Source of the DNA: Malacoraja senta | Taxonomy: Eukaryota | Assembly (NCBI GenBank): GCA_038087875.1 | Contig: CM075987.1 | Span: 27,962,001 to 28,026,000, forward strand | Direction of reading: 5' to 3' | Length of the DNA stretch: 64,000 nt | Shown here: piece by piece, positions 7,921-64,000 of the stretch | How the letters are laid out: each line of letters starts with the position of its first letter | Position numbering within the stretch: position 1 is the stretch's first letter | Notes under the pieces: model-generated | Told to the model about the DNA's origin: nothing | Databases searched by the model: none | Seen by the model: only the letters and a program-made list of their open reading frames with translations | Translations under genes and position numbers: made by a program

Positions 7921-10016
7921 GCGAGGAACAGAGGGAGAATAAAAGACCTTTAGAAGAGATGGGAGGAATTTCTTTAGTCAGAGGGTGGTGAATCTGTGGA
8001 ATTCATTGCCACAGACAGCTGTGGATGCCAAGTCATTGGTATTTTTAAAGTGGGGTTTGATAGGTTCTTGTTTAGTAAGGGTGTCAAAGGTTATGGAGAG
8101 AAGCAGGAGAATGGGGTTGGGAGGGAGAGATGGATCAGCCATGATTGAATGGCGGAGTAGACTTGAGGTGTCCCGTGTCCACCTGTTGATGGGGTCACAG
8201 TTTGCCTGTCCTCAGGATACAGGTGTAAGGGCACCAGAGTAGGTTAGGATCCATGATCACTCTCGACTGGCAGCTTGTGCAGGCCATCTCCATGCCTGAA
8301 GGCAGCTCCCACTGTTGCTCTTGGAGTTGTTCTGCGATGAGCCTCTCGATGGAGGGAGTCCACACTACTCACTCAGTCCAAGTGTCCAGGGTTCCTGCGG
8401 CAACATGATGGCACCCACGCACTGCTCTCTCCTGATGATGTGGTGATGTTGGCAACTCTGAGCTGCCCATTTACTCTTCTCTGCCCGCACATGGGAGATG
8501 AGGCCGGGAAGTTGTGTCCGAGGATCATCACTGACCGCTTGGACACCTCCGTAGGGATTCATCACACCAGCTGACGGGAATGTCACTCTCCTTCTGGGCG
8601 AGAGAGAGAGAGTGTGGGGAGAGAGAGTGCGGGAGTGTGTGTGAGAGTGCGAGTGAGTGTGTGTATGTGTGAGAGTGCGAAAGAGAGGGTCCACTGGTCA
8701 TGTCAGTGATCCAGTGCAAGGTGGCTTGGTGATCCTGTGGATGAATGGCTGTCCATCCCACAGGGTGTTTGATTGTGTAATTCTTATTGTCACATGTACT
8801 TGGTACAGTGAAATGTTTCTCCCATGGAGTGAGGGATGAGTGAAGGAGTGAAGGAGGGGTCTGGAAGCTGTATGCACACAGATCTCAGAGAGCAAATCAT
8901 AATTCAGGATACGTTTATGAAAAGTTCTTTCAAAACATTCATCATAATGATCATGAGTATTTCCTCCGAAAGAAATCGGCAGATGCTGGAACTGTGAAGC
9001 CAACGTTACTCAGGAGTGAACTCAGCAACCCCTCCTTCAGAACTGGAACCCAGTTCCACATGGGACAATGCATGGAGCTTCTGGATTTACCTGAAGACTG
9101 ATGGGTTTTCCTGGCCCAGGTGTGCAAGTGAGGAACGGTAGCCACGTCATTGATGGGCAGCAGGGCCGGCAGCTGGAGGGTTGTAGTCTTGGTGCTTCAG
9201 GCTGTTGGATGAACCAACTGTGAGCCCGTCCACACACTGATAGAGCTCAGCAGGAATCGCTTAAAGAGAGAGCAAAGATCATGATCGGGCCCGCTGTACA
9301 TCATGAAGCAACACAGATATCAGCTTGCGTTTCACAGAGTGCTGGAGTAACTCAGCGGGTCAGGCAGCATCTGTGGACAACATGGATAGGTGAAATACGT
9401 TTTGGGTTTCGGATTGAAGAAGGGTCCTGACTCACAACGTCACCTATCCATGATCTCCAGAGATGCTGCTGGATCCGCTGAGTTACTCCAGCACTTTGTG
9501 TCAATGAGGGAATACATGTTCCTTGTATAAAACCCTTCTAACCCTAACTTAGTGGGCCAGCACCTCATTGGATCAGCACATTTACACCAGGTCCACCGCA
9601 CCGCCCAACACCGCCACCTGCAGGTTCCCCTCCTGCTCACACTCTCTCCTGATTGTAAATACGCCGGTCCTTCATCCACTGACTCTCCCACACCCAGCAG
9701 CGGGAGCACTGCAGCAGCTCATGAAGGTATACACCTCCACCCCCTCCTCAGGGGCATGTCGGGGGCAGGAGATGGTGGCTATGTCAACAACTTGCGCATG
9801 TGACAAGTACATCATTAAAATCAATGTCATCAGTCATCCCCCTCACCACAGCGTTGGAATACAACACCTCAATTGATCAGTGGGTGAGAGAGAGAGAGAG
9901 ATCTCCTTCACCACTATGTCCCACTTCATCCAAAACGAACAGATCACAGAAAATACTGGAGACAGCAAGTCAGGCAGCAGCTATGGAGAGAGAAAGAGTA
10001 AATGTTGCCCACCATG

Positions 10017-11691: not shown

Positions 11692-11869
11692 GTAAGTGTG
11701 AAACCACTCTGAAGCAAACACACCCGCCCACCACCCTGCTCTGCACCTATCTCTCATTCTGGATACTCTTCACAAGGAGGTGACCTTGTTGACCTGCATC
11801 CTCCAGTTTCCCATTCCTCGAAGCCGGTCCATATCCAGTTCTGCTTGCCACACCCACTGTGTCATCGCA

Positions 11870-12718
11870 CACACCACACCACCGTCACAAACCACACCAC
11901 CGGCACAAACCACACCACCGGCACAAACCACACCACCGTCACAAACCACACCACCGTCACAAACCACACCACCGGCACAAACCACACCACCGGCACAAAC
12001 CACACCACCGGCACAAACCACACCACCGGCACAAACCACACCACCGGCACAAACCACACCACCGGCACAAACCACACCACCGGCACAAACCACACCACCG
12101 GCACAAACCACACCACCGGCACAAACCACACCACCGGCACAAACCACACCACCGGCACAAACCACACCACCGGCACAAACCACACCACCGGCACAAACCA
12201 CACCACCGGCACAAACCACACCACCGGCACAAACCACACCACCGGCACAAACCACACCACCGGCACAAACCACACCACCGGCACAAACCACACCACCGGC
12301 ACAAACCACACCACCGGCACAAACCACACCACCGGCACAAACCACACCACCGGCACAAACCACACCACCGTCACAAACCACACCACCGGCACAAACCACA
12401 CCACCGGCACAAACCACACCACCTGCACAAACCACACCACCGGCACAAACCACACCACCGGCACAAACCACACCACCGGCACAAACCACACCACCGGCAC
12501 AAACCACACCACCGGCACAAACCACACCACCGGCACAAACCACACCACAAACCACACCACCGGCACAAACCACACCACCGGCACAAACCACACCACCGGC
12601 ACAAACCACACCACCGGCACAAACCACACCACAAACCACACCACCGGCACAAACCACACCACCGGCACAAACCACACCACCGGCACAAACCACACCACCG
12701 GCACAAACCACACCACCA
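11870..12718. repeat. 18-bp minisatellite (ACAAACCACACCACCGGC)n, about 47 units
   Basis: Near-perfect array; explains the long repetitive ORFs on both strands. Confidence 0.97.
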
Positions 12719-14451
12719 GCCGTACAGGTCAGAGCACCACATTGTCCCGTACACTCCCCCAGCTCAATCACACTTTCTCTTTCCCTGTCCTGACAGAGTT
12801 TTCAACTTGAAACATTAACTCTTTCTCTCTTCACAGATGCTGCTGAGTGTTTCCAGCAGTTTCTGTTTTCATTTCAGATTTCCAGCATCTGCAGTTTTTC
12901 GTTCCCATTAGTCAGGGTTCCACTCAGTCCCATCCCCCTAACATGGGCAAATACGTCCAGTTTAGATGGGGCATCTCAGTTAGTATGGATGAGTTGGGCA
13001 GAAGGGCCTATTTCCATGCTGTCTGGCTCCCTGACACTGACTAATGGCATGTGGGCTGGTAAGTTAATTGGTTGCTGTAAAGAATCATGACTCTAGTTGG
13101 TGGATCTAGGGGAACTGATGGGAATGTGAGGGGAGAAAAATAGGATTAATATAGGATTAGTGTAAACAAATGGCTGACGGTTGGCACAGACTCGATGGGC
13201 TGAAGGGCCTGTTTCCATGCCCTATCTCTCCACAATTCTATGACTGTAGAAAAAGAAGAGAAGGAAGGATTCAGGAAAGGACAATGTGAAAGTTAGGGCA
13301 GATCATTGAGTTCTGTTTGATTGCAGGAAGCAGCTCCGAGACTTCCATCAATGCACAAAACAGAGGCAAGGGCTGGGGCAAGGACACTGAGGAGATGGTG
13401 ATCCCATAAAGTCTTGAAGATGACAGAGTGAACCAGCATCTGCACTTCCTTCATTCTCCAATGCGGTTTACAGGAACCTGGAATACATGGGTCACCTTAT
13501 GAAGAAACGTTGGACATGTTGGGCTTGTATCTGCCAGAGTTTAAAATAATGAAAGTGGACTGAATTTAAATATATAAGGTCCTGAGATGTTTTGACAGGA
13601 GAGCCAGAGAGGATCTTTCTGCTTATGAGTGAAACTAGATCAAGGATCACTGTTTAAAAGTAAGAATCTGGTGTTTTTGGCGGAGAGAAGGTGACAGATT
13701 TCCTCCTGGTGATCCGTGAGTTATAACTCTCCACACCAACTGCTGGAAACAGTCATGGAATATTTTAACGGCAGACCCTTGATAAGCAGTGAGCTGAGTC
13801 ATTTGCTGTGAAGCAACTGGAATGTGGAGTTGATGCATCTGTATGACAAGCGACACTATGCCAAGACACACTGAGTAGGTCAGGCAGAAACAGCTTAGGA
13901 TGGTTCAGGGTGAGCTGCTGAGTACTCAGATCTCTGGCTTTTTCTTCTGTTTGATTTAAATCCTTAGACATTTTGTTCGACAATTCTGGTTACATTATGA
14001 TGACAGAGAAAGGGAGAGAAAGATTCATTAAATTGAAGTGTGGCTAAGAAATGGGAACCAGCAGATTCTGTGGGAAGTTGACACTTCCCGTTCCAGGAAT
14101 GCCTGGCTGCTTCCTTCTGTCTCTGCTGGAAGTCCGACACAAAGGGTGTGTGGAGGTGGGGAGCAGCCTTGCAGGAAGGCCGCAGAGAGGAGGTTGATTC
14201 CCAGAGAGGGCAGTGAGGGAATGGGAATAGACGTGTGCTGCAATGACCCCGGTGAATGTACTCTCCTGGGTCAATCGTCCTCCATCGGAGAAGATACTGA
14301 ACCTGACTGACCTCTCCAGTCACTGTGTCCAAGTGGTTATGTTGTGGAGAGGAGGTTCACCGTGACCCTGGGCCGTGGACACACGGTGGTTGTGCACAAA
14401 ACATGACCTCAAATGTTAACCTCTTCCTCTCCCCCCCCCCCCCCCCCCCAG

Positions 14452-16677: not shown

Positions 16678-16865
16678 TGTGCAGCGGGTAGTGCTGCTGC
16701 CTCCAGTCACCCTGTTCAGCCCTGACCTTGGCCGTTATCTACCAGGGGGTTGCACATTATCCTGTGAACGTGTGGGTTTGCTCCGAGTGTTCCGGTTCCT
16801 TCCACATCTCACAGTTGTGCGGGTCAGTGTTTGAGTCGGCTGCTGTAAATGACCCTTGGGGTAGG
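16678..16865 (+). mobile_element. Diverged HE1-like V-SINE, 5' two-thirds, running into the 15-bp array
   Basis: GCAGCGGGTAGTGCTGCTGCC...CGTGTGGGTTTGCTCCGAGTGTTCCGGTT...TGTAAATGACCC. Confidence 0.75.
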
Positions 16866-17825
16866 TGGTCACTAGTGTAGTGGTCGTTAATGTAGAGGTC
16901 ACTAGTGTAGAGGTCACTAGTGTAGAGATCACGTCTAGTGGTCACTAGTGTAGAGGTCACTAGTGTAGAGGTCACTAGTGTAGAGGTCACTAGTGTAGAG
17001 GTCACTAGTGTAGAGGTCACTAGTGTAGAGGTCACTAGTGTAGAGGTCACTAGTGTAGAGGTCACTAGTGTAGAGGTCACTAGTGTAGAGGTCACTAGTG
17101 TAGAGGTCACTAGTGTAGAGGTCACTAGTGTAGAGGTCAGTAGTGTAGTGGTCAGTAGTGTAGAGGTCAGTAGTGTAGAGGTCAGTAGTGTAGTGGTCAG
17201 TAGTGTAGAGGTCACTAGTGTAGAGGTCAGTAGTGTAGAGGTCACTAGTGTAGAGGTCACTAGTGTAGAGGTCACTAGTGTAGAGGTCACTAGTGTAGAG
17301 GTCACTAGTGTAGAGGTCACTAGTGTAGAGGTCGCTAGTGCAGTGGTCGCTAGTGCAGTGGTCACTAGTGCAGTGGTCACTAGTGTAGAGGTCAGTAGTG
17401 TAGAGGTCAGTAGTGTAGTGGTCACTAGTGTAGTGGTCACTAGTGTAGTGGTCACTAGTGTAGTGGTCACTAGTGTAGAGGTCACTAGTGTAGTGGTCAC
17501 TAGTGTAGAGGTCAGTAGTGTAGTGGTCACTAGTGTAGAGGTCACTAGTGTAGTGGTCACTAGTGTAGAGGTCACTAGTGTAGAGGTCAGTAGTGTAGTG
17601 GTCAGTAGTGTAGAGGTCAGTAGTGTAGTGGTCAGTAGTGTAGAGGTCAATAATGTAGAGGTCAGTAGTGTAGAGATCATGTCTAGTGGTCACTAGTGTA
17701 GAGGTCAGTAGTGTAGAGGTCACTAGTGTGGCCATTAGTGTAGTGGTCAGTAGTGTAGAGGTCAGTAGTGTAGTGGTCACTAGTGTAGAGATCATGTCTA
17801 GTGGTCAGTAGTGTAGTGGTCAGTA
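16866..17825. repeat. 15-bp minisatellite (GGTCACTAGTGTAGA)n, about 64 units
   Basis: Direct reading; variants GTCAGTAG and TAGTGG. Confidence 0.97.
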
Positions 17826-21753: not shown

Positions 21754-22870
21754 TAATGCACCATGAGACAGGATGGGTCCTTCACTCAGTGACGTGGACA
21801 CACAGACAGTGAGCAGTGGTGACATTACTAATCTTCACTGTAGTACCAAGGTCTCCAAAGACAATCAGGAACATTCTGAGCTGTGGATGGGAAGGTGATC
21901 AATGAGGCTCAGCACGTTTATGAAGAGCTGCCTCAGCCTGGTGAATCTGTGGAATTCATTGCCACAGACGGCTGTGGAGGCCAAGTCATTGGGTATTATA
22001 AAAGTGAAGATAAATAGATTCTTGATGAGGTGAGGGGTTATGGGGAGAAGGGCAGCAGAATGGGGTTGAGAGGGAGAGATTGATCAGCCATGATTGAATG
22101 GCAGAGTAGATGGGTTGAATGGCCTAATTCTGCTCCAATGTCTCATGGCTGCTGTCTTTAATCAGGAGGGCTGCAGGTGGAGATGGATGTTCAGTCCATG
22201 CAGTCCGGCCATCTGTCTGCTCACCTGGTTCCACCCCTGGGCGGTGTGGGGAATCGATACACGACACTGCCCCTGACTCGTGCTACCTAACGGTGGAGGC
22301 AAGAGGTACCTGTGTCCGAGTGGCCAGCGTGTCCTTCATTGATGGCCATCTCTGAGCCTGGGACTGGTTAGAAGTGGCCAGGGTAGTGGCAGCATCCCAT
22401 TGCTCTGCTGGTCAACAAGGATCCAGCAGGTATCTCCGGGGCAGCTGAAGGTGGGCGAGGGGGTGGAGATATAATGTGGGAGAGAGAGGATGGGGAGAGA
22501 AATGGGGTGATGGAAGAGAGAGAGAGAGTTTGGGAAGAGGGAGAGGAGGGAGGAAACTATTGAGATGATGATGCATGAGGATAACTGATAATGAGATATT
22601 TGACAAACTATTGTCCCAGAAGTGGCAGCAAGCACAGGGAGAAGTAAATGAGGTCACTTTGGGAAGTGAAGCAGGGCTTTGAGAGTGCTGCTCCTTTGCC
22701 AAAGCGACAGCAATTCCTTTTCATTTGATGCTGCTGCAATAATAGTGAGGCTGGTCCCGAGCAATGGAGAAGATTGTCCCATTGTATTCCTGGCAATTTA
22801 ACTTCAGCAAGTGTGGAGGACGGTATGGAGTGGAACTCTCCCCTGACCTCACAGAAAAACCCTGTGTTAA

Positions 22871-24133
<1,263 letters not shown>

Positions 24134-24167
24134 TGACTGTCGGCGCAAGGCCTGTGTTCAGGCGCTG

Positions 24168-25858
24168 ACACTGGTTATAGCGCACTGTTACACTGGGTTA
24201 TAGAACTGTTACACTGTGTTATAGAACTGTTACACTGGGTTATAGCACTGTTACACTGGGTTATAGCACTGTTACACTGGGTTATAGCACTGTTACACTG
24301 GGTTATAGCACTGGGTTATAGCACTGTTACACTGGGTTATAGCGCACTGTTACACTGGGTTATAGCACTGGGTTATAGCACTGTTACACTGGGTTATAGC
24401 ACTGTTATACTGGGTTATAGCACTGGGTTATAGCACTGTTACACTGGGTTATAGCACTGGGTTATAGCACTGTTACACTGGGTTATAGCACTGTTACACT
24501 GGGTTATAGCACTGTTACACTGGGTTATAGAGCACTGTTACACTGGGTTATAGCACTGTTACACTGGGTTATAGCACTGGGTTATAGCACTGTTACACTG
24601 GGTTATAGAGCACTGTTACACTGGGTTATAGAGCACTGTTACACTGGGTTATAGCACTGTTACACTGGGTTATAGCACTGTTACACTGGGTTATAGAGCA
24701 CTGTTACACTGGGTTATAGCACTGTTACACTGAGTTATAGCACTGTTACACTGGGTTGTAGAGCACTGTTACACTGGGTTATAGCACTGTTACACTGGAT
24801 TATAGCACTGTTACACTGGGTTATAGCACTGTTACACTGGGTTATAGAGCACTGTTACACTGGGTTATAGCACTGTTACACTGGGTTATAGAGCACTGTT
24901 ACACTGGGTTATAGCACTGTTACACTGAGTTATAGCACTGTTACACTGGGTTATAGAGCACTGTTACACTGGGTTATAGCACTGTTACACTGGGTTATAG
25001 CACTGTTACACTGGGTTATAGCACTGTTACACTGGGTTATAGCACTGGGTTATAGCACTGTTACACTGGGTTATAGCGCACTGTTACACTGGGTTATAGC
25101 AGTTACACTGGGTTATAGCACTGTTACACTGGGTTATAGCACTGTTACACTGGGTTATAGCACTGTTACACTGGGTTATAGCACTGTTACACTGGGTTAT
25201 AGAGCACTGTTACACTGGGTTATAGCACTGTTACGCTGGGTTATAGCATTGGATTATAGCACTGTTACACTGGGTTATAGCACTGTTACACTGGGTTATA
25301 GCACTGTTACACTGGGTTATAGCACTGTTACACTGGGTTATAGCACTGTTACACTGGGTTATAGAGCACTGTTACACTGGGTTATAGCACTGTTACACTG
25401 GGTTATAGCACTGGATTATAGCACTGTTACACTGGGTTATAGCGCACTGTTACACTGGATTATAGCACTGTTACACTGGGTTATAGCACTGTTACACTGG
25501 GTTATAGAGCACTGTTACACTGGGTTATAGCACTGTTACACTGAGTTATAGCACTGTTACACTGGGTTATAGCACTGTTACACTGGGTTATAGCACTGTT
25601 ACACTGGGTTATAGAGCACTGTTACACTGGGTTATAGCACTGTTACACTGGATTATAGCACTGTTACACTGGGTTATAACACTGTTACACTGGGTTATAG
25701 CACTGTTACACTGGGTTATAGCACTGTTACACTGGGTTATAGCACTGTTACACTGGGTTATAGCACTGTTACACTGGGTTATAGCACTGTTACACTGGGT
25801 TATAGCACTGTTACACTGGGTTATAGCACTGTTACACTGGGTTATAGCACTGTTACAC
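24168..25858. repeat. 21-bp minisatellite (GTTATAGCACTGTTACACTGG)n, about 80 units with 13- and 23-bp variants
   Basis: Direct reading. Confidence 0.97.
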
Positions 25859-26371
25859 CTAGACAAGGAAACAAGCAGTTACTGTGCCTCTCTCTCCGTC
25901 CCCCCCCCCCCCCCAATAAACTGCAGCTCCTCAGTAACAGTCACAGTAGCTTTGTAATCTTTAACAGTCCTGTCATTTTACTGCAAGGGCCAGCGGAGAA
26001 ACATGGAAACATAGAAACTAGGTTCGGAGTAGGCCATTCGGCCCTTCGAGCCAGCACCGTTATTCAATATGATCATGGCTGATCATCCAAAATCAGTACC
26101 CCGGTCCTGCTTTTTGCCCATATCCCTTCATTTCGTTAGCCCTAAGAGCTTAATCTAACTCAGAGCGACCTAACTCGCCGTTTCTCACAAGTTAGACAGT
26201 GAGTGGATCCCAGTGTGAGCAAATTAACATCACTAACACACATTAACCTGGCCATTAATACTGATAAAATATCCATTAATAACTGATTGAGAAGTGCAGC
26301 CACAACTCTTACACAGGGTAAGTCTGAGGGTTAATAGATGCACAGAATGATTCCACACAGAACAAACTGAG

Positions 26372-40990: not shown

Positions 40991-43271
40991 AGCTTCCTTG
41001 CCTTACCTTACTTCAGAGCTTTGCAGAAAATCTGAAGATGTAGACTCAATTCATTCTGAATTTTAAAAGTCAGTCTACTCCACTCCCGTGCTCATCCTTC
41101 TTCACTGATCCTCATATTTTGGGAGACATGTCTCACTGGCTTTGCATCAGTATATTAATAAGATTAGAATAATTAAGATCTTAAATGCTAGGAGCAAAGA
41201 CAAGATATCTTTCATACTTCAGAAAGAGCACAGCATGTAACTCCATCTGATTTCTGTGGAAGCGCTGGATTCATTTGTATCTGTAATTATATCTCCCGAA
41301 AAGCAACTGGAATAATCTGATCCACAAGAGCAATGATTTATGTAGACCTACAAAAGGAGGACGTGTAGAGAAGATCTTTTAATCCAAAGTGTAAAGGGAT
41401 ATTTCTCTCTGAAGTCCTGAAATGAAATTTTAATTTGTGCAAAGAGAAATTACAAAGTCATCAGTGTGGGCTATACGAAGAATGAACTTCATTAGCTTAT
41501 GGAATGCGGTAAACATTTCTCTTGTTCTTTTACAAGGAGGAAAATTTGATTTCTGTAGACATTTAGATGAAGATCTTAGGTGATAACTAGGTGAGCCATC
41601 AAATTTGATGAAAGCATTGAATGAATTACTCTAGGTCAGGCACTAGATAGAGCAATAGATTTAAGGGGAATATGTTTAAATTGTCTAATACAATAGTAGT
41701 AATCTATGTGCTAACATATTTGTTTCATATTCCTTCACATGGTTTAATATTAATACATTTAGGTTAAATGGTCCATACCTTAATGAAAACATTGGTGGAT
41801 GAAATTTCAGATGAACTATTTGTTGTTAATATTGTTCTGTGCAATTTCCAACCTTGGCTGCCTCATTTTATAATTACGGATTCTGAATATAGAAGAGGGG
41901 CCAGCACACATGTGGAAGGTATGAAAGTGTCGAGATCTCTGCTGTGTTCTTCATCAGTGAGTCTTCCATCACATGGAACTGACACACAGCCATTATTCTG
42001 ACAAAAGTGAAAACAAATAAGAAATTTTAAGAAGAAAGTGAGATAACACAAAGGCTGTTTTCTGTCCTTCTTTATTGTTGGGTTTCCCATTGAAGGACAT
42101 ACCTAGTAGCATGTAAATCACATTTATCACTGATGTATATTGTGTATCAGCAGTTTCAGTAATCAATCCAATACATAATACTCAAGGCTCTATTGTAACT
42201 TTACCTATTACAAACTCTCCTTGCTCGGGTGTTTATTTTTTAGCGTCCTGATTGTGCGTCAAGTCACGTATCTGTTTTTCAGCACTTGTCTCTCTACCCC
42301 CAAGTCTTTCTCAATTTAAAAGAACTCGTGCTTTGCTTCTAAACTTGACAGACATCAGCTGCATTGACACGCGTCATTGTATTCTGGATTCCACAGTTCA
42401 AAGCTCAAGATTAGAAAGTTCTTGTTTATATTTCTATTTTGTTTGGAAACAATATAGCATCTAGTAATGGATCCAAGTTAATGAAGAGTCTGGGCTCCAC
42501 ACCGAAAATAGCGACTGCTGACATCTCAGTCTTAAGTAAATGAACTGGAGCCTATTGGCTCCTTCACTCATGGTTATTAAATGCATCCTTCTGCATTCTT
42601 TAAAAAAGACTATTCTTCAGGACATCAAAGGAGGAATCAGTTTGGAACAAGAGTTACACAAGTAGCCTGGTGGTCGGCTCAAAATAATGTGTCTTTCATG
42701 GCTTTTCACAGCAAAAGAGGCAGAAGGAATAGAAACATGTTAACATGGATTATGAATAATATTTTAATGGTAACGTTCAGGTATTACTTATTTTGTTTTA
42801 AGTTTATTTAGGTTTAAATTTTTTATAGATTTTATTTTATTTCTATAAATTGTTTTGAAAATCATACAAAGAACACGAGTGTATTAGTGACTAGTGCACT
42901 ACATACATGAAGGTTCATACATTCTCATCTTCAAGATCTGAGTCACGTTCATCAGATTCACTGCTTTCACAAATCTCAGCTTGCGGTGAGGTTTTTCCTT
43001 TGATTTACCATTATTGCTGCTTGACAGTTAGGCCCTCCTTTGCCAGTTGAACAATGTGGGATCCTCAAAGTGATTAAATCATCCTCTAGCAGTCAGTTTG
43101 TTGGAACTGCCTTTCTTGGGCCTGGTTGCCACAGAGGTTTGTCAAGCCAATTATCTGTAGTGTACAGCTACTTGATTTCTACTTGCCACTACAAATATTA
43201 GACAAAGGTAGATTATAAATAGCTACTATCGACAGAAAGAAAGTCAATAACATCAAATATATCTGTTCTAG

Positions 43272-43385
43272 GATAGAAAAAGTGGTAGCGCAGAACCTGA
43301 CCCTAAAAAGAAAGCAGCATCTTTTAGATCGCTCACTTCAACACTGACCTCCAGCTTCAAGAGACGTAGGTCTTCCAAAGACACG
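43272..43385 (+). CDS. grin1: GluN1 alternative C1 cassette [38 protein letters not shown] (114 nt)
   Basis: ttctag|GAT...ACG|gtaaga; KKK and RRR ER-retention motifs and kinase-site serines present; absent from the ORF track. Confidence 0.96.
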
Positions 43386-48220: not shown

Positions 48221-48289
48221 CAGTACCACCCTACTGATATAAGTGGGCAACTGAATCTCTCAGACCCTTCTGTCAGCACAGTAGTGTGA
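48221..48289 (+). CDS. grin1: GluN1 terminal C2' exon QYHPTDISGQLNLSDPSVSTVV*
   Basis: (CT)n-tattttacag|CAG...GTG TGA; ends in the STVV PDZ/ER-export motif. Confidence 0.96.
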   Translation, partial: QYHPTDISGQLNLSDPSVSTVV

Positions 48290-56169: not shown

Positions 56170-57103
56170 GCATCGTGGGAGTGGCGGCGCCTAATGGCAG
56201 CGGCTCAACTACAGTCGTCCGTCTTTTTTTTATTTTTTGTCTTGTTAAATGTATGTCTGGAGCTTAGTTTTTTATTATTTTTTAGCTGTGTATATGTGGG
56301 GGTGGAGGGGGGGATGTTGGGGAAACCGTTAATCTCCTCCCTGTACGGGGACCCGACTTTTTCTCTGTCGGATCTCCAATGTCGTTGGGCCTAACATTGT
56401 GGAGCCGGCGGCGGCCTCCAGCCGGGACCAACCTGAGGGCTCAAGTCGCGGAGCCTGGGACCTGACATCGCGGAGCTGGCCGACTTTGGAGCGGGGAGAG
56501 CTGTGGTGGCGCGCGGCTGCGACCCGATTTTGGAGTTTTGGAGGCTCCGGCTGCGGGCCCGGTGGACAGGAACATCGGGAGCTCCAGGTCCCTGGTGGGA
56601 GACGTTTTTTCGGAGCACCCGCAACGGCAACTTCTCCCGCTGGAATTGCGAGGTTCAAAGGACATGGACGGGACTTACCATCGCCCGCCGGGGGCTCTAA
56701 CATCGGAGCCCCAGTTCACCTAGACACTGCAGTTGGACTGCGGGTTGGACTGCTTGAACCGCGGGGTTTGAAGGGCGCGGAGCCTGAAGGGCGCGGAGCC
56801 GGGGCTAGCATCGCCCGGCGTGGCCACGGGATTTGCCATCGTCCGCCGGGGGCTTTAACACCGGAGCCCCAGTTCGCCTAGACGCTGCAGTTGGACTGCT
56901 GGTGAAGAATAAAGGGAAGAGATAAGACTTTGCCTTCCATCACAGTGAGGAGGTGTTGGAGACTCACTGTGATGGATGTTTATGTAAACTGTGTTAAGTG
57001 TGGGTCTTGGTTTTTTTTTGTAATGTGTTAAAAAAAACTGTAGTAATGATATTTCGTTCAAGCCTAGGCTTGAATGACAATAAATAGCATTCAATTCAAT
57101 TCA
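56170..57103 (+). mobile_element. CpG-rich non-autonomous retroelement with internal direct repeats and AATAAA-(TTCAA)n tail
   Basis: Abrupt GC/CpG island in AT-rich DNA; ~60-bp internal duplication (about 56680 and 56838); LINE-like tail; related 3' end on - strand at about 59910-60110. Confidence 0.7.
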
Positions 57104-57645
57104 AAAATAGGTTAAATAACCTGCTCCTATTTGTTTCTCACAGCACGAAAAACAATTCAATGCGGCTGAAGATAGGTTTAGCTCTGGGCAGAGTAAATAT
57201 AGCTATTGCTTTGCACAGCAAGACCCATTTATGTTGATCCCATTTATGTTGATCCCATTTTATTTTCCCCACATTTAGTTTATAATGACTGCCAACATCC
57301 TCTCTAACACAGAAGGCTGAAGCTCCCAACATGACTCTCAGCTTCTGGCAAATTTCTACTAGGGAGCACTCAGAACACTGAATATTGCTAAATAGCTTTT
57401 ATTATTTTCACAAATCTTATTTTTATATCTGAGTATAATTTCATATTATCTATCCACAATCTTTATGACCTTGAATTAATCTCATCAGCAGTTACCAACC
57501 TAAAGGTTCCTACTCATTCCCATCCAACTCTGCAACAGCTTAAAAAAAAGAGTCTTGATAAATTAACAGACCAAGTTGTTATTTCTTGTGAGTATGCCCC
57601 GATTTATCAGGATGTGCTGTGCAATACCAGATTTTAAATCATTCA

Positions 57646-57651
57646 TTTATT
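57646..57651 (-). terminator. Candidate polyadenylation signal (AATAAA on - strand) for the unnamed gene
   Basis: TTTATT on + strand about 230 nt past the stop; common hexamer in AT-rich DNA. Confidence 0.3.
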
Positions 57652-57883: not shown

Positions 57884-58026
57884 TCATTTTGTTTTGTAAA
57901 ATACATTAAATCCATCAAGGAAATTCTGGTCATTGACAGTTAGAATAGAAGCGCCTTCAAAAATCCTCTCCTTTGCCATCATTATTACTGAAGCCTCTTC
58001 CATACTAAATACGTCTTCTGCATTAT
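57884..58026 (-). CDS. Exon D (last coding) of unnamed gene: (D)NAEDVFSMEEASVIMMAKERIFEGASILTVNDQNFLDGFNVFYKTK*
   Basis: - strand ctttgttttccttctcag|AT...; open to TGA in phase 1 within AT-rich DNA. Confidence 0.72.
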
Positions 58027-58056
58027 CTGAGAAGGAAAACAAAGTAAATCACATAA

Positions 58057-58262
58057 GAAAGGAACTGCAATGCTAATTTACACTGAAGACACAAAATGCT
58101 GGAGTAAAGAGCGGGCAGGCAGCTTCTCTGGAGAAAAGGAATAAGCTACATTTCAGAACGAGACCCTTCTTCAGTCTGATTCCTATTTTCATTCACCTAT
58201 TCCTTTTCTCCAGAGATGCTGCTTAACCTGTTGAGTTACTCCAGAATTTTGTGTCTATCTTC
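58057..58262. mobile_element. Fold-back Penelope-derived unit with 11-bp target-site duplication
   Basis: AAATCACATAA at 58046-58056 and 58263-58273. Confidence 0.8.
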
Positions 58263-58991
58263 AAATCACATAATTAGTTCCTTTTCATTACAGTCATGTG
58301 TTTTTTGAGATGTTTCACTCTGTTTTCACCCACCTACACTCTGATACATAGTTCTGTACAATCTGTTATTACAAAATAAAAGGATTGAATAAAAAGCTAA
58401 AAACACCCTCTCTGGAAAGTTGGTGAATAATCTATGAATCTTCTTAAATTGATATTGATATATTGTCACGTGACACAGTGAGATACTGAGATACAGTGAA
58501 AACCTTTCAATCTTAATCTTAATTATCTCTTCTCATTTCAGAGTACTACTGTTACTAGGATCTGAGATTTGGGGATTGAAATCTATTACGGTCAGTTTTT
58601 TACATAAGTGCTGCATTTAAGATTTTTGAATCATTTCTATGATCAGGTTCTTTTCATTCTTGCTTTTAGTCAAGTTGAGAAGGAAGACAATACCATTAGA
58701 ATAATGACTTGGCATTGCACATTTCCAATTGGAGTTAGGGGAGGGAATGGGTTTCCGTAAAGACAATGTTAACAAAATTGAGAAGCAAGGCTTCCATACA
58801 CATAATCCAGATTTCTAAGCAAGCGGGAAAAGTTATTATACATTTTGGAGTACTACAATATGAGTGGTTCCCCTTTCTGTTGCTAATTAACTGAAACTAG
58901 TCGCACAATGAATTCTGTACGCTCTTTTCAGAATAATCCCTTTTATTAACCAAATATTGGAGACACAGAACTCACTTCATGGGATACTAAC

Positions 58992-59081
58992 CTGGACAAA
59001 CTGGAATACACTTGGAACAATCTGTGCCATCCTTCTTTCTGGCACATAGGTCCTGGCATTTTTGCACAGAAATACCACACA
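58992..59081 (-). CDS. Exon C of unnamed gene: (V)CGISVQKCQDLCARKKDGTDCSKCIPVCP (90 nt, phase 1-1)
   Basis: - strand ctcttttttcatag|TG...CCAG|gttagt; 6 Cys in 30 aa. Confidence 0.82.
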
Positions 59082-59198
59082 CTATGAAAAAAGAGATATA
59101 TGCAATTCATGAGATACATGCTTTGCTTTCTTATATTTCTACAAATGTTCACAATCTATTCATTGATTAAAAAAGAACAAAGACATCAGCAATCATAC

Positions 59199-59276
59199 CT
59201 TCACTAAATGAAGTTTTTACAATCCCAATGCAATTACACAATTGATCCTCTTGGCCACATATTGGTCCAGGAAATT
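59199..59276 (-). CDS. Exon B of unnamed gene: (E)FPGPICGQEDQLCNCIGIVKTSFSE (78 nt, phase 1-1)
   Basis: - strand gtgtttcag|AA...GAAG|gtatga; open in the phase required by exon A. Confidence 0.78.
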
Positions 59277-60465
59277 CTGAAACACATACTGCAAAGCAAC
59301 CAGTGTCATATTGGAGAACAAAATTAAACAACACTGGAGACAACAATTAGAAAATAATTATTCTAAAAATTTTTGTCAACTTTTCTCAAACACCCTTACA
59401 TTGGCTTCATTAGCAAAACCATTATTTGAATTTCACTTTTTTCACCTTTTATCATTTTGGTCAGTCAAATTCTTACTTTATTTACTTGAGCAACTAACAC
59501 AATAAAAAAATCTTAACCTAAAATTCTCCATAAAATCTGAATGTTATTCTTAAGTTATTCATTTCTTTAAAAAGGGAAAGTGTATTATTCCATTGACCAT
59601 TGATAAAAATACAGTTCCAGTATAAAATTTCTGCTACAAATGAGACCCTAATGGCCTGAAAATAATGCTACAACTAAGATTAGTAATTTGCCCATCAAAC
59701 CTTAACAGATAAATTCTGCAACCCCAACACCGCCACGTATTTCACTGTTCATTTATACCACCCCCACCCCCCCCCACCTTGCTCATAATCACCCTGAGGT
59801 TCCCACAATGCCAAGGATCCATTCCCAAAACAGTCCTGAACAACCCCAAGGCTAGAGCTTTCCCCCCAGTCAGAAATGTCAGCTGTTTAGTTACATTTTT
59901 CCGACAGTTAAAATCAAATTCAAAGTCAATTTTATTCGTCACATACACCCGAAGGTGCAGTGAGATGAATTTGCCAGCAGCGATACAATTTAAAAAGAAC
60001 ACACAATACACAATACGATTTAACACAAACATCCACCACAGGATTCTTCACTGTGGTGGAAGGCACAAAGTTCAGTCAGGCCTCCTCCTTGTTCACCCGT
60101 GGTCAGGGCCATTAATGAGTTCATTAATGTTCAAAAAATTATAAAGGATGAATAAAAAGAATAAATTAAAGTAAGAAATTAAAGTAAGAAATGAAGCCTA
60201 CCTTCCCCCATTGTTCCTGTATCTGTACCCTACAAACCCCATTTCAATCAATCAGTTCTCATATCTTACACCCAGTCTGACTGATGGTGATGCTGGAAAA
60301 TCTCAGCAAGACTGGATCAATCCATGGATACAAGTTCTCTACTTGCAAGGATAGTGGAACAATATCAGTCATGGCTTTCAAAGTGAATCAGATAGGCACT
60401 TGAGGGATAAACAATCTTAAGTAGAACTTAAGGACAAATGAGGTATAAACAGATGATTGTTTTAC

Positions 60466-60687
60466 CTGCCGGGGTATAGATGGTCGAATAAAGATTGAAG
60501 GTGAAAATGGTTGAGGCATCAAGAAGATAAAACACTTTGGGTCTCCAAGTCTCCAGTATTCCAGTGCATGCCCTTCCTTGCTGCAAGCATTCACGTTTGG
60601 CTGCAGTCAGAGTAGTTTTTGAAGGGTAATCATATGGAGGTTTTAATGTCAGCCCAATCCTCGCTTTTTTCTGAAACCAGTCCATAT
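60466..60687 (-). CDS. Exon A of an unnamed convergent gene: MDWFQKKARIGLTLKPPYDYPSKTTLTAAKRECLQQGRACTGILETWRPKVFYLLDASTIFTFNLYSTIYTPA (222 nt, phase 1-1)
   Basis: - strand ctttcag|AT...GCAG|gtaaaa; fully open (inside ORF 60428..60769); resembles a PAN/apple-like module (inference). Confidence 0.75.
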
Positions 60688-60757
60688 CTGAAAGGTACAT
60701 AGTTCTACGTAAATCCACAATGCTATCTGTAAAAAGAGGGTTACATTGATTGGCAGA

Positions 60758-61175
60758 GTGAGGCTGCATACAAACTGGAGAAACAGCACCTCATATTGGA
60801 TGATATGAATATTGAATTCTCCAATTTAAGTTACAACACCCCCCCCCCCCCAGCCTCATCCCTCTCCCCTATTTCTTGTGCCCCTGGACTCGCACCTATT
60901 TCTCCCCTCCCCCTACATTCCTTCCTCTAGTTTCACAATTCACAACTCTTCAATCTTTTTGTCTCACGCCTTCTGCTTTGTTCATCTCTGGCATTTGTCC
61001 AACCATCTGCCTATCAACCTCCTCCCTCACCCTTACCCACCTATTACCTGCAAGACTTTGTCTTATTCCTCTCTCTTCCTGCTTTCTCCCAACTCCCACA
61101 TACAATCAATCTGAAGAAGGGTTCCAACCCAAAACATCACCTATCCATGTTCTCCAGAGATGTTGCCTGACCCTC
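60758..61175 (+). mobile_element. Penelope-like element 3' remnant (endonuclease tail, pyrimidine-rich UTR, terminal repeat)
   Basis: Encodes KLEKQHLI...MNIEFSN, like the Penelope GIY-YIG C-terminus; similar remnants on - strand near 27535-27615 (KLEEYLIFHLCSLQ) and 52130-52200. Confidence 0.65.
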
Positions 61176-61932
61176 GGCGATATTCAGAGACAGTAGGGTG
61201 GAGTGCAGATAAAGGACAGGACATTTGGACCTGGATGATTCCATTCCGAGGATGTGAGTTCGTTTAAAAAAAAAACTGGCAGTTTTCATGGGGCTTTGTT
61301 TCAACTGTGAAATTTCAGTTAAACCCAATTCAATTTAGATTCCCACTGTTATCTGCCATAGGATGATCTTGATGGGATATTTGTATACTTCAGTGAAAAA
61401 AGGTTTTCTACGACTTAGGTTCCTAGCATTCACATGGGCTAGACAGCCAGTATGTCTGTCTAGCTCTGTCCTCAGTGAGCTTAGTGTGAATATTAGTGGA
61501 AACATTTGTTACAAGTTTTAGGTTGCTAATAAACTAAAAAAGGGTTTTCTCCATCAAAGCAACTTTGGGCTAATCGCTGGATATCAAATATTCTTATGGG
61601 ACATAAGGAATGAAAATGTTACACTCAAAAGGAAAGGCTATGTTGATAAAATTATCATAGATGTGATTTTTTGGATTAGAAGAGTGCTGAGAGAGAGGCC
61701 GCAGCAGTCAAGAGTTAACCGCTTGTAAGGAACACATTGCAAGAAGTCAGACGTAGAATATTCTGATTGTTAAGCATGGTGAGTTCTGTGTAAAGTCATC
61801 CACAGCAAGTGAATACAGGCCATCTGGGACAGGAATGGGATCTGTTTTTACACACAACAATGAGTTGATTTGTGAAGGAAGGAACTGCAGATGCTGGTTT
61901 AAACCAAAGATAGATACAAAAAGCTGGAGTAA

Positions 61933-62500
61933 AGGGGCTGTCCCACTGCGGCGACCTAATTGGCGAGTTTAGAAGAGTTTAGGAGAGTTTGGAAAAATGT
62001 CATGTTGAAGACCTCCGACTATGTAGAAGACCTCCTTCGACCTCCTTCGACTATGTTGAAGACTAGCTTTGACTAGCTACGACTAACATCGGGAAAATTG
62101 GACACCGAATAGTGGAGAGTGAAGACAACCTCCTTCGATCTCCTTTGACCTCCCTTCGACTATGATGAAGACTATCTACGACTACCTTAGACTACCTTTG
62201 ACTACCTTCGACTACCCTCGATTACCAACGACTAACATGCTGACCTACTACGACTAAACCTACGAGTAAAAAAAGTATCGATTTTTCCATGGCGACTTTT
62301 TTTTACTCGCGGGCATTTTTCAACATGTTGAAAAATACGGCGCGACCTAGCTGATGCCTTGAGTACACGGGGACTACTCTCGAGCATGAAGGAGAGTTAC
62401 AAAGACCTCCTAGGACCTCGTGCGGACCATGCTGCGAGTATGAGTCGAGGGCAAACTCGCCAGAACTCGCGGATTAGGTCACCCAAGTGGGACAGCCCCT
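61933..62500 (+). mobile_element. PIF/Harbinger-type MITE, copy 1 (568 bp)
   Basis: TIR AGGGGCTGTCCCACT...AGTGGGACAGCCCCT; TAA duplication; splits a Penelope-derived repeat at GGAGTAA|CTCAGC. Confidence 0.88.
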
Positions 62501-62713
62501 TAACTCAGCAGGACAGGCAGCATCTCTGGAGAGAAGGAATGGGTGGCGTTTTGGGTCGAGACCCTTCTTCAGACTCAAGTTGATTTTGTCTATTTGTTGG
62601 AAAATAGATTTTTAAAAACTCAGTATGGTAACCATACCTTCACAGCATTGTAATGAATGATATCAAAGTATACAGCATTTAAAACAATATTCATATCCTC
62701 TATTTTTATCCTC

Positions 62714-62846
62714 TTTCCAGAAGAAGGGTTTCGACCCGAAACGTTGCCTATTTCCTTCGCTCCATAGATGCTGCTGCACCCGCTGAGTTTCTCCAGCATT
62801 TTTGTGTACCTGGGATTTTCCAGCATCTGCAGTTCCTTCTTACACA
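62714..62846 (+). mobile_element. Solo 133-bp Penelope-derived repeat with 16-bp target-site duplication
   Basis: CTCTATTTTTATCCTC at 62698-62713 and 62847-62862. Confidence 0.8.
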
Positions 62847-63436
62847 CTCTATTTTTATCCTCCCTTTTTACAGCGCCAACCTTCCTGTTCATCGCGGTGT
62901 GTGTCTGTTTCACCTTGGCTTTGCACTGTGTGAATTTTTTAGACAGCGCTCCCCCCGCTTGCCCTGTCCCCGCCCGCATAACGGGCTGGTGAGGAAGCGA
63001 TGTGTTTGTGACAGTCGCCGGTAGTCTGCTTAAAATCGCCTGTGGGACAGGCCCATAAGAATCCCCAAAGTTTCAGAAAAAGGAAGCTTCTTGTCATCGT
63101 CCAATCAGTCTTCTGCCAACCTTATTGCCAATTACTACAATGATATGGTTCAATGTCAGAAGATGTCAAGAGAAAACGATGCTCATGATTTAATAGTGCA
63201 AGAGTAGATTCTTTTATTTGTTATTAGTGTTACCCACTGACCCTACAGAGGGTGCTATTAACAATATGATCATAATCCTTGCAATGTACATTGGACCAAC
63301 ACTTTAAAGGGAGTAGCCAGACCATTGGACAGTATAGAGGGCAGTCATTAAAATGGATCGGACCTCCTACAGCAATCCTTGCACAGGGAAGCCTACATTG
63401 CACCTATATACTACAACTGCTAAAATTCTCTCCTTA

Positions 63437-63880
63437 AGGGGCTGTCCCACTGCGGCGACCTAATTGGCGAGTTTAGAAGAGTTTGCCCACGACTCATACT
63501 CGCAGCATGGTCGACACGAGGTCCAAGGAGGTCTTTGTAACTCTCCTCCATGCTCGAGAGTAGTCTCCGCGTACTCGAGGCCTCAGCTAGGTCGCGGAGT
63601 ATTTTTGAACATGCTGAAAATTGCCCGTGAGTAAAAAAAGGTCGCTATGGAAACAAATAATTTTTTTTTTTACTCGTCCGTTTAGTCGAAGTAGGTCGGC
63701 ATGTTATTCGTAGGTAATCTAGGGTAATCGAAGGTAATCAAAGGTAGTCAAAGGTAGTCGTAGATAGTCTTCAACATGGTCGAAGGAGGTATTCTACATA
63801 GTCGAAGGAGGTCTTCAACATGGCACTTTTTCAAACTCTCCTAAACTCGCCAATTAGGTCGCCGCAGTGGGACCGCCCCT
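63437..63880 (-). mobile_element. PIF/Harbinger-type MITE, copy 2 (444 bp), inverted relative to copy 1
   Basis: Same TIR; TTA duplication; interior is the reverse complement of copy 1. Confidence 0.88.
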
Positions 63881-64000
63881 TTAATCTTTTTAAGTAAGTT
63901 ACTACTCGGAACTTAATTTACACAATAATTTAATAATCTAAATAAGCAAGAGGATGAAAGATTACTGGAAAGAGGTGGAAATGAAGAGCTGAGGTTACAT

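What the first reader, a model, noticed from the sequence alone, without database searches (positions are those of the whole stretch)
57884..60687. Hidden convergent gene: four phase-1 exons encoding an unnamed Cys-rich module, tail-to-tail with grin1
Seen: four - strand segments (60687-60466, 59276-59199, 59081-58992, 58026-57884) each have a pyrimidine-AG acceptor. The first three have GT donors and lengths of 222, 78 and 90 nt, all multiples of 3. All four are open in the same phase in stop-rich AT DNA. Spliced: ..MDWFQKKARIGLTLKPPYDYPSKTTLTAAKRECLQQGRACTGILETWRPKVFYLLDASTIFTFNLYSTIYTPAEFPGPICGQEDQLCNCIGIVKTSFSEVCGISVQKCQDLCARKKDGTDCSKCIPVCPDNAEDVFSMEEASVIMMAKERIFEGASILTVNDQNFLDGFNVFYKTK*. 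Established: symmetric phase 1-1 exons are typical of shuffled extracellular modules. Inference: this is the C-terminus of a secreted multidomain protein, with a PAN/apple-like unit followed by a C-x6-C-x-C / C-x6-C-x3-C-x8-C-x2-C-x3-C disulfide unit and no transmembrane segment. I do not recognise it as a named mammalian gene. Its 5' exons appear to lie beyond the window. Only exon A appears in the ORF track in the right frame.
Basis: partly seen in the sequence, partly recalled or inferred. Interest (0 to 1): 0.85.

Follow-up and report, generated by a model that had tools for sequence, protein, structure and literature searches.

The report
Uncharacterised lectin-family gene beside grin1
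The four minus-strand segments are real exons: they encode the C-terminal half of an old but unstudied secreted protein (C-type lectin domain, then a PAN/apple-like domain, then a 10-cysteine unit) that has sat tail-to-tail with grin1 from skates to lizards, is already predicted as an "uncharacterized protein" in related genomes, and gave no mammalian match.

Summary
The four minus-strand segments have AG acceptors, three have GT donors, and they splice into one open frame ending in a stop.

One boundary needs correcting. Exon B most likely starts 12 nt further upstream, at 59288. This restores a cysteine that all orthologues keep and matches the RefSeq model in thorny skate.

The spliced peptide is 93% identical to Amblyraja radiata LOC116991016. 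It is 71% identical to an electric-ray protein, about 59% to shark proteins and about 30% to coelacanth, lizard and turtle proteins. All 12 cysteines are conserved, and so are the phase-1 intron positions.

Orthologues carry a signal peptide and one C-type lectin domain (elasmobranchs), or five lectin domains plus a LamG/pentraxin domain (reptiles, about 1,680 aa). None has a transmembrane segment in this tail.

The gene is convergent with GRIN1 in thorny skate and in Pogona as well.

Exon A folds as a PAN/apple domain. The 10-cysteine unit matches no family.

No paper mentions the gene, and no mammalian, bird, amphibian or teleost hit appeared.

It is a real but only automatically annotated gene, of modest interest. 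The lectin exons lie outside the window, so I could not check whether the gene is intact in this species.

The parts
60466..60687 (-). Exon A (222 nt, phase 1-1): PAN/apple-like domain, starts ..DMDWFQKK, 2 Cys
   Evidence: Splice sites and frame. tblastn E 2e-21 to 5e-20 to shark orthologues. phmmer hits to shark, lizard and coelacanth proteins. PAN fold of the orthologous segment. The equivalent single phase-1 exon exists in Pogona. It is skipped in frame in Narcine isoform X4.
59199..59288 (-).
   Evidence: The upstream acceptor restores a Cys conserved in all orthologues. The same site is used in the A. radiata RefSeq model. The 59276 acceptor remains a possible minor alternative.
58992..59081 (-). 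Exon C (90 nt, phase 1-1): VCGISVQKC..C..C..CIPVCP, 6 Cys
   Evidence: The Pogona equivalent exon is also exactly 90 nt and phase 1-1.
57884..58026 (-). Exon D coding part (143 nt): acidic/amphipathic C-terminal tail ending ...FYKTK, with TGA stop at 57886-57884
   Evidence: (E 6e-12 to Scyliorhinus). The conserved E-E-x-A and K-[IVLF]-[IF]-Y motifs extend to reptiles.
57646..57651 (-). First AATAAA after the stop (233 nt downstream): candidate polyadenylation signal, untested
   Evidence: Pattern scan only. Further AATAAA sites at 57403 and 57264.
48221..48289 (+). Context: grin1 terminal coding exon (C2' cassette, QYHPTDISGQLNLSDPSVSTVV-stop), convergent with the gene above
   Evidence: The same ending is found on the convergent neighbour in A. 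radiata (L002) and Pogona (L001).

Best explanation
These are the last four coding exons of the skate orthologue of an unnamed, ancient jawed-vertebrate gene for a secreted, disulfide-rich CTLD-containing protein. The window comes from a rajid skate close to, but not the same as, Amblyraja radiata. In elasmobranchs the full protein is about 330 aa: a signal peptide, one C-type lectin-like domain (three exons), then the tail encoded here. The tail is a PAN/apple-fold domain with a single C-x6-C pair (exon A), a 10-cysteine unit that opens with an EGF-signature-like C-x2-G/x-F-x-G-x2-C (exons B and C), and a cysteine-free acidic helical tail of about 45 aa (exon D). In coelacanth and reptiles the same tail ends a much longer protein, which in reptiles has five CTLDs, a LamG/pentraxin domain and three copies of the PAN-like unit. 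Shown here: the exons, their orthology, the synteny with grin1, the conserved cysteines and intron phases, the predicted PAN fold, and the absence of a membrane anchor. Inferred: the protein is secreted and acts as an extracellular binding or adaptor protein. Its PAN and CTLD surfaces would bind protein or glycan ligands. The CTLD next to the tail lacks the EPN/QPD and WND motifs, so classical calcium-dependent sugar binding by that domain is unlikely. Because all exons are phase 1-1, modules can be skipped in frame, as seen for exon A in one electric-ray isoform model. Ligand, tissue and physiological role are unknown.
For: The spliced ORF and splice sites are. Orthologues were found by phmmer with exon A alone and named. 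All four exons hit the Scyliorhinus protein in order. Identity is 93% aa / 97% nt to A. radiata LOC116991016 and 71% to Narcine. All 12 Cys align across skate, shark, coelacanth, lizard, turtle and snake. Pogona has the same four-exon, phase-1 layout, with exon C at 90 nt in both. Synteny: A. radiata has the gene followed by a convergent GRIN1. Pogona has a RING gene, this gene, an LRRC26-like gene, then a convergent GRIN1. A Phrynocephalus model even fuses this gene with LRR domains. Sixteen squamate and turtle orthologues of 1,143-1,916 aa (most about 1,560-1,740), most with Lectin_C + Pentaxin/Laminin_G_3, are all unnamed. A PAN/apple fold is predicted for residues 1-75 of the tail, with pLDDT about 71-90. 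pLM features also point to PAN. The PAN-like + C-x2-G-F/Y-x-G-x2-C unit is repeated inside the long forms. There is no TM-grade hydrophobic stretch in the tail, and orthologues have signal-peptide-like N-termini. Three intact CTLD exons lie upstream in A. radiata, and the last ends in phase 1, matching exon A.
Against: The lectin and signal-peptide exons are not in the window. Orthologous alignment to A. radiata stops 28 nt upstream of exon A's acceptor, and the 3.3 kb beyond is partly repetitive and non-orthologous. Intactness of the gene in this species is therefore unproven. dN/dS against A. radiata is about 0.8 (12 non-synonymous, 4 synonymous changes). Exon identity (97%) barely exceeds intron identity (93-97%), so there is no short-term signal of constraint, although the counts are too small to decide. 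No RNA evidence could be consulted. Pfam PAN profiles do not match, and only 2 of the usual 4-6 PAN cysteines are present. The cysteine-rich unit could not be modelled (pLDDT 44). The function is entirely inferred.
Confidence: 0.82

Rival explanations
1. It is a decaying or truncated copy in this species. The four tail exons are still open, but the lectin exons were removed or separated by rearrangement or transposon insertion, so no functional protein is made.
For: Orthology with A. radiata breaks 28 nt upstream of the exon A acceptor. No CTLD exon lies within 3.3 kb, whereas in A. radiata all three lie within 4.1 kb. dN/dS is about 0.8 against A. radiata. Dispersed repeats fill the upstream stretch.
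Against: All splice sites, the frame, the stop and all 12 cysteines are intact. The 12 amino-acid differences from A. radiata all fall at variable, mostly conservative positions. Sixteen substitutions are too few to test for constraint. Large introns are normal for this gene: the Scyliorhinus model spans 83 kb. A transposon insertion of more than 3.3 kb in an intron is harmless.
Confidence: 0.13
2. It is a member of the mannose-receptor family (MRC1/MRC2-like), as several RefSeq names suggest.
For: Automatic names such as 'C-type mannose receptor 2-like' and 'macrophage mannose receptor 1-like'. The long forms have multiple CTLDs.
Against: Pfam finds no ricin-type Cys-rich domain and no fibronectin type II domain in any orthologue scanned. 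The C-terminus has no transmembrane anchor. A LamG/pentraxin domain and PAN-like units are present, and mannose receptors lack these. The genomic position beside GRIN1 is unrelated to the MRC loci.
Confidence: 0.03
3. The segments are chance open frames flanked by chance splice-like motifs in AT-rich DNA.
For: Short ORFs and AG/GT dinucleotides are common. Only exon A shows up as a long ORF.
Against: There are ordered, in-frame protein matches to orthologues from six vertebrate orders, with E down to 1e-21 and 2e-131 for the spliced peptide. Intron phases are conserved.
Confidence: 0.01

Closest known systems
Amblyraja radiata LOC116991016 (XP model, 203 aa, 'uncharacterized protein') and its elasmobranch orthologues (Narcine bancroftii 333 aa; Scyliorhinus canicula XP_038638546-8 'C-type mannose receptor 2-like'; Rhincodon typus XP_048469296 'lectin BRA-3-like'; Pristiophorus japonicus)
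   Same: Same gene. It has the same four terminal exons, the same exon B acceptor as corrected here, and the same convergent position next to GRIN1. Identity is 93% (A. radiata) down to 59% (sharks).
   Different: It is a different species: 16 nt differences in 543 nt. The A. radiata model is itself truncated, starting at an in-frame ATG in the intron before exon A and missing three intact CTLD exons upstream. None of these models has been studied.
Reptile and coelacanth long forms (e.g. Pogona vitticeps LOC110087453, 1,687 aa; Anolis LOC103281621 / UniProt H9G5D8; Chelonoidis LOC116820418; Latimeria LOC102355497); gar W5MZM1
   Same: Homologous C-terminal tail with all 12 Cys, the same exon phases and the same neighbourhood with GRIN1.
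   Different: About 30% identity. The long forms carry five CTLDs, a LamG/pentraxin domain and two extra PAN-like units that the ~330-aa elasmobranch form lacks. Pogona has an LRRC26-like gene between this gene and GRIN1, and that gene is absent from the window.
PAN/apple domains (HGF N domain, plasminogen PAp, factor XI/prekallikrein apple, TgMIC4 apple, HAI-1 MANEC, leech antiplatelet protein)
   Same: The predicted fold of the exon A product is a five-stranded sheet packed on one helix. About 70-77 residues align at Z 5-8, with Foldseek probability 1.0 and TM by hit 0.56-0.59 for single-domain entries.
   Different: No sequence-profile match to PF00024/PF14295. Only one cysteine pair (C-x6-C) is present, instead of two or three disulfides. 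Identity is 7-15%.
Vertebrate CTLD-protein groups I-XVII (Drickamer; Zelensky and Gready, PMC514892), especially group VI mannose receptors and group XIV (CTLD + EGF)
   Same: Extracellular proteins built around C-type lectin-like domains, in some groups followed by EGF-like cysteine modules.
   Different: The groups quoted in the passages of PMC514892 returned by a term search do not include a CTLD + PAN + 10-Cys tail, with or without LamG/pentraxin; 'apple' and 'LamG' occur nowhere in that text and 'pentraxin' once. From my own knowledge, no group does either. The CTLD beside the tail lacks the EPN/QPD and WND sugar/calcium motifs (sequences).

Membership tests
Orthologue group of A. radiata LOC116991016 / Pogona LOC110087453 (unnamed CTLD-PAN-Cys-rich gene next to GRIN1) | Full-length collinear similarity of the C-terminal tail, including all 12 cysteines | tested here: met
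   93% identity to A. radiata, 71% to Narcine, 59% to sharks, about 30% to sarcopterygians, with all Cys aligned.
Orthologue group of A. radiata LOC116991016 / Pogona LOC110087453 (unnamed CTLD-PAN-Cys-rich gene next to GRIN1) | Same exon-intron layout (four terminal exons, all junctions phase 1) | tested here: met
   Searches (Pogona; A. radiata) compared.
Orthologue group of A. radiata LOC116991016 / Pogona LOC110087453 (unnamed CTLD-PAN-Cys-rich gene next to GRIN1) | Convergent neighbourhood with GRIN1 | tested here: met
Orthologue group of A. radiata LOC116991016 / Pogona LOC110087453 (unnamed CTLD-PAN-Cys-rich gene next to GRIN1) | Upstream signal peptide and C-type lectin domain in the same gene | not testable with these tools
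   No CTLD exon in 60688-64000. The sequence beyond 64000 is not available.
PAN/apple domain superfamily | Fold: antiparallel sheet cradling one helix, about 70-80 residues | tested here: met
   AlphaFold model of the Scyliorhinus orthologue's tail, pLDDT about 71-90 over residues 1-70. Foldseek and VIA top hits are consistently PAN/apple. These are predictions for an orthologue, not the window's own sequence.
PAN/apple domain superfamily | Match to the Pfam PAN_1 / PAN_4 sequence profiles | tested here: not met
   No hit at E up to 10 for exon A or at E up to 5 for 16 orthologous tails.
PAN/apple domain superfamily | Core disulfide pattern (two or three conserved disulfides) | tested here: not met
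   Only two cysteines (C33, C40; C-x6-C) occur within the domain in all orthologues.
Mannose receptor family (CTLD group VI) | N-terminal ricin-type Cys-rich domain, FNII domain, 8-10 CTLDs, C-terminal TM anchor | tested here: not met
   Pfam on the orthologues finds only Lectin_C, Laminin_G_3 and Pentaxin. There is no TM in the tail.
Calcium-dependent carbohydrate-binding C-type lectins | EPN or QPD motif plus WND motif in the CTLD long-loop region | tested here: not met
   I read these directly from the orthologue sequences. The CTLD preceding the tail has D-L-x-N-G...KDCV and G-L-L-T-D in those positions. Other CTLDs of the long forms were not examined.
EGF / laminin-EGF domains (for the cysteine-rich unit) | Profile match and six-cysteine EGF pattern | tested here: not met
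   Only sub-threshold hits (E 0.23-2.3) in 1-2 of 19 members. The unit has 10 Cys. A PDB profile search gave only FSTL1 at E 2.1.

The most novel reading that the evidence does not exclude
This is the elasmobranch member of an undescribed vertebrate CTLD-protein group: CTLD, PAN-like domain and a new 10-cysteine domain, with or without LamG/pentraxin. The group would predate the split of cartilaginous and bony vertebrates, would have stayed linked to GRIN1 for more than 400 million years, and would have been lost in mammals and possibly in birds, amphibians and teleosts. Its cysteine-rich C-terminal unit would define a new domain family.
Probability: 0.45. Interest if true: 0.45.

Novelty: new member of a known kind. 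Interest (0 to 1): 0.3.

Why it matters
The result turns an unannotated-looking stretch into the 3' half of a real gene, and it corrects one exon boundary. It also shows that the thorny-skate RefSeq model of the same gene is truncated. More broadly, it documents a conserved gnathostome gene for a secreted lectin-domain protein that has no name, no paper and no Pfam family for its C-terminal 105 residues. The gene keeps an ancient linkage to GRIN1, and no mammalian counterpart was detected. That makes it a modest candidate for studies of gene loss and of non-mammalian extracellular or innate-immune proteins. It does not reveal a new mechanism.

Tried and rejected
- **Word-indexed protein search with exon A alone:** it found nothing because of the length filter. 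This says nothing about novelty.
- **PDB sequence searches:** exon A, exon D and the tail profile gave nothing significant.
- **Pfam:** nothing on the exon pieces, on 16 tails or on 19 cysteine-rich units.
- **AlphaFold on the cysteine-rich unit plus tail alone:** pLDDT was 44, so I ran no fold search on it and its fold stays undetermined.
- **DNA of other orthologues:** Scyliorhinus DNA could not be fetched because the file was too large. The P0002 and P0028 look-ups were not on record. No deep dN/dS was therefore possible.
- **Upstream exons:** I looked for lectin exons and any open exon-like frame in 60688-64000 and found none. I looked for orthologous A. radiata upstream DNA anywhere in the window and found only repeats.
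- **LRRC26-like or RING neighbours:** neither is in the window.
- **Signal-peptide exon in A. radiata:** no convincing candidate within 6 kb upstream of its CTLD exons.
- **Literature:** searches by locus and accession names and by synteny terms gave no relevant paper.
- **Earlier scan notes:** nothing bore on this locus.
- **Not done:** I did not type the spliced 181-aa peptide into any database tool, because no reference exists for it. Structure work used orthologues as proxies.
Full report

There are four segments of 222, 78, 90 and 143 nt. Each follows a pyrimidine tract and AG. The first three are followed by GT. Joined in phase 1 they give the 177-aa peptide and a TGA at 57886-57884.

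The window is vertebrate DNA with grin1 exons on the plus strand. These include the C1 cassette near 43.3 kb and the C2' terminal exon ending ...SDPSVSTVV-stop at 48289. The two stop codons face each other 9.6 kb apart.

**2. Is it a gene?**

A word-indexed search with exon A alone failed because of its length filter. An exhaustive phmmer search of exon A against 1.84 billion representatives found four true relatives:
- Scyliorhinus canicula 'C-type mannose receptor 2-like', 321 aa
- Rhincodon typus 'lectin BRA-3-like'
- Pogona vitticeps LOC110087453, 1,687 aa
- Latimeria LOC102355497

tblastn of these proteins against the window hits exons A, B+C and D in order and in frame, with E of 5e-20, 4e-17 and 6e-12 for Scyliorhinus.

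A later search added Narcine bancroftii (333 aa), Pristiophorus japonicus, and Amblyraja radiata LOC116991016 (203 aa). The spliced window peptide is 93% identical to the A. radiata protein over 180 residues, 71% to Narcine and 58-60% to sharks. The window therefore comes from a rajid skate close to, but distinct from, A. radiata. The CDS differs at 16 of 543 nt, and introns are 93-97% identical.

**3. A boundary correction**

A second acceptor 12 nt upstream (exon B = 59288-59199, 90 nt, still phase 1-1) supplies VCVS.

This brings the cysteine count from 11 to 12, and all 12 align in every orthologue. The A. radiata RefSeq model uses the equivalent acceptor. The 59276 site may still be a minor tandem acceptor.

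**4. Gene structure and synteny elsewhere**

In Pogona (locus L001) the tail is encoded by four exons with the same phase-1 junctions. Exon C is 90 nt in both species, and the preceding CTLD exon also ends in phase 1. The Pogona neighbourhood is:
- a RING-finger gene
- this gene
- an LRRC26-like LRR gene
- a convergent gene whose last exon ends QYHPTDIAGQLNLSDPSVSTVV-stop, which is GRIN1

In A. radiata (L002) the gene is followed directly by convergent GRIN1, as in the window. A Phrynocephalus model that fuses this gene with LRR domains fits the same adjacency. No LRRC26-like sequence lies in the window.

**5. What lies upstream?**

In A. radiata three intact CTLD exons lie 1.4-4.1 kb upstream of exon A, at L002 about 6021-6182, 6786-6905 and 8542-8665. 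They have proper splice sites, and the last ends in phase 1, so ...CKSMK joins D-MDWF. The 203-aa RefSeq model, which starts at an ATG in the open frame just upstream of exon A's acceptor, is therefore truncated.

In the window the situation differs:
- Orthologous alignment with A. radiata stops 28 nt upstream of the acceptor, at 60715.
- The remaining 3.3 kb contains dispersed repeats and no CTLD exon.

Either a large insertion pushed the lectin exons beyond 64000, or they were lost. This cannot be decided from the window.

**6. Domain content**

Pfam finds Lectin_C (one domain in elasmobranch proteins, three in coelacanth, five in reptiles) and Laminin_G_3/Pentaxin in the reptile long forms. 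It finds nothing for the tail.

An AlphaFold model of the Scyliorhinus tail, from a 16-sequence alignment, is confident over residues 1-70 (pLDDT about 71-90). It is mediocre over the second half of the cysteine unit (59-76) and poor elsewhere.
- Foldseek against the PDB gives the HGF N domain, plasminogen PAp, MIC4 apple and SML-2, at probability 1.0 and TM by hit 0.56-0.59 for single-domain entries.
- An independent all-against-all VIA search puts PAN, apple, MANEC or WSC domains in most of the first 28 ranks, at Z 8.0-3.8 over 66-80 aligned residues.
- Language-model features also point to PAN.

By fold, exon A encodes a PAN/apple-type domain. By sequence profile and disulfide pattern (one C-x6-C pair only) it is not a canonical member.

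The 10-cysteine unit opens with an EGF-signature-like C-x2-G-[FY]-x-G-x2-C, then follows C-x-C...C-x6-C-x3-C-x8-C-x2-C-x3-C. It matches no profile, and a stand-alone model failed (pLDDT 44).

The PAN-like + C-x2-G-[FY]-x-G-x2-C unit recurs after internal CTLDs: three times in Pogona and twice in Latimeria.

The tail has no TM-grade hydrophobic stretch and no N-glycosylation sequon in the skate. Orthologues begin with signal-peptide-like segments. AlphaFold DB clusters return Anolis H9G5D8 and gar W5MZM1 as the only hits that align well beyond the PAN part with clear scores: residues 1-176 at E 2e-11 and 2-133 at E 8e-8. This extends the family to ray-finned fishes.

**7. Constraint**

Over deep time the evidence is strong: 12 of 12 cysteines, motif conservation in exon D, and conserved intron phases across more than 400 million years (established divergence of cartilaginous and bony vertebrates).

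Between the two skates the signal is absent. There are 12 non-synonymous and 4 synonymous differences, giving dN/dS about 0.8. All 12 fall at variable columns and none touches a cysteine. With 16 substitutions this neither supports nor excludes relaxed selection.

**8. Function (inferred)**

The protein is most likely a secreted extracellular binding protein. The CTLD adjoining the tail lacks EPN/QPD and WND (sequences), so canonical calcium-dependent sugar binding by that domain is unlikely. PAN/apple domains elsewhere mediate protein or carbohydrate binding (established knowledge).

The symmetric phase-1 exons permit in-frame module skipping. Narcine isoform X4 lacks exactly exon A, though that is a model I could not verify with reads. 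No ligand, tissue or phenotype is known.

**9. Known or new?**

RefSeq pipelines already predict this gene in at least 25 species, always as 'uncharacterized protein' or with borrowed lectin names. No paper in the searchable library cites any of the locus names I tried.

The groups quoted in the passages of the Fugu CTLD survey returned by a term search (PMC514892) include no such architecture; 'apple' and 'LamG' do not occur in that text and 'pentraxin' occurs once.

No mammalian, avian, amphibian or teleost protein appeared in any search. Those searches were limited by length filters, word seeding and a single-exon query, so loss in those lineages is likely but not shown.

**10. Verdict**

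The gene is real and old. It is only automatically annotated, and it is built of known kinds of extracellular modules plus one unclassified cysteine-rich unit. Interest is modest.

Noticed in passing
L002:5982-8665 (Amblyraja radiata, upstream of RefSeq LOC116991016): Three intact C-type lectin domain exons with good splice sites lie upstream of the 203-aa RefSeq model. The model starts at an in-frame ATG in the intron before exon A, so the public annotation of the sister species is truncated.
   Followed up: yes
window 60688-64000: Orthologous alignment with A. radiata ends abruptly at 60715, 28 nt upstream of the exon A acceptor. The rest is non-orthologous and contains at least five dispersed-repeat blocks (61000-61173, 61871-62085, 62137-62578, 62720-62846, 63434-63886). 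This is either a large insertion or a rearrangement in this intron.
   Followed up: partly
window 56173-57104: A segment of about 930 bp is absent from the orthologous A. radiata sequence, where the alignment jumps across it at L002:14771. It is GC-rich with several 74-160-aa ORFs. A 70%-identical copy sits in the A. radiata intron at L002:9097-9573. It is probably a recently mobile element.
   Followed up: partly
window 59276-59288: Tandem acceptors lie 12 nt apart (cag|TATGTGTTTCAG|). Using the downstream one would delete VCVS, including a conserved cysteine. This is a possible minor isoform or splicing noise.
   Followed up: partly
P0031 (Narcine bancroftii isoform X4): This predicted isoform joins the lectin domain directly to the cysteine-rich unit and skips exactly exon A (the PAN domain) in frame.
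   Followed up: no
P0011 (Latimeria XP_064420727, residues 681-745): This newer coelacanth model replaces the acidic tail (the exon D equivalent) with a different C-terminus that contains a strongly hydrophobic stretch (KD19 2.26 at 717). It may be an alternative membrane-anchored end or intron read-through.
   Followed up: no
P0029 (Pristiophorus japonicus model, residues 1-230): The N-terminal part of this model looks like a retroelement integrase fragment and low-complexity sequence fused in front of the true signal peptide. It is a likely annotation chimera.
   Followed up: no
window 11770-12820, 16750-17800, 22760-24140, 25250-25870: Long minisatellite or low-complexity arrays lie in grin1 introns. 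They produce 250-400-aa artefactual ORFs on both strands.
   Followed up: no
window 43270-43380 and 48221-48289: The grin1 C1 cassette exon (...[11 protein letters not shown]) and the C2' terminal exon are recognisable. My motif scan found no C2-type ending (...HRES-stop) after 30 kb.
   Followed up: no
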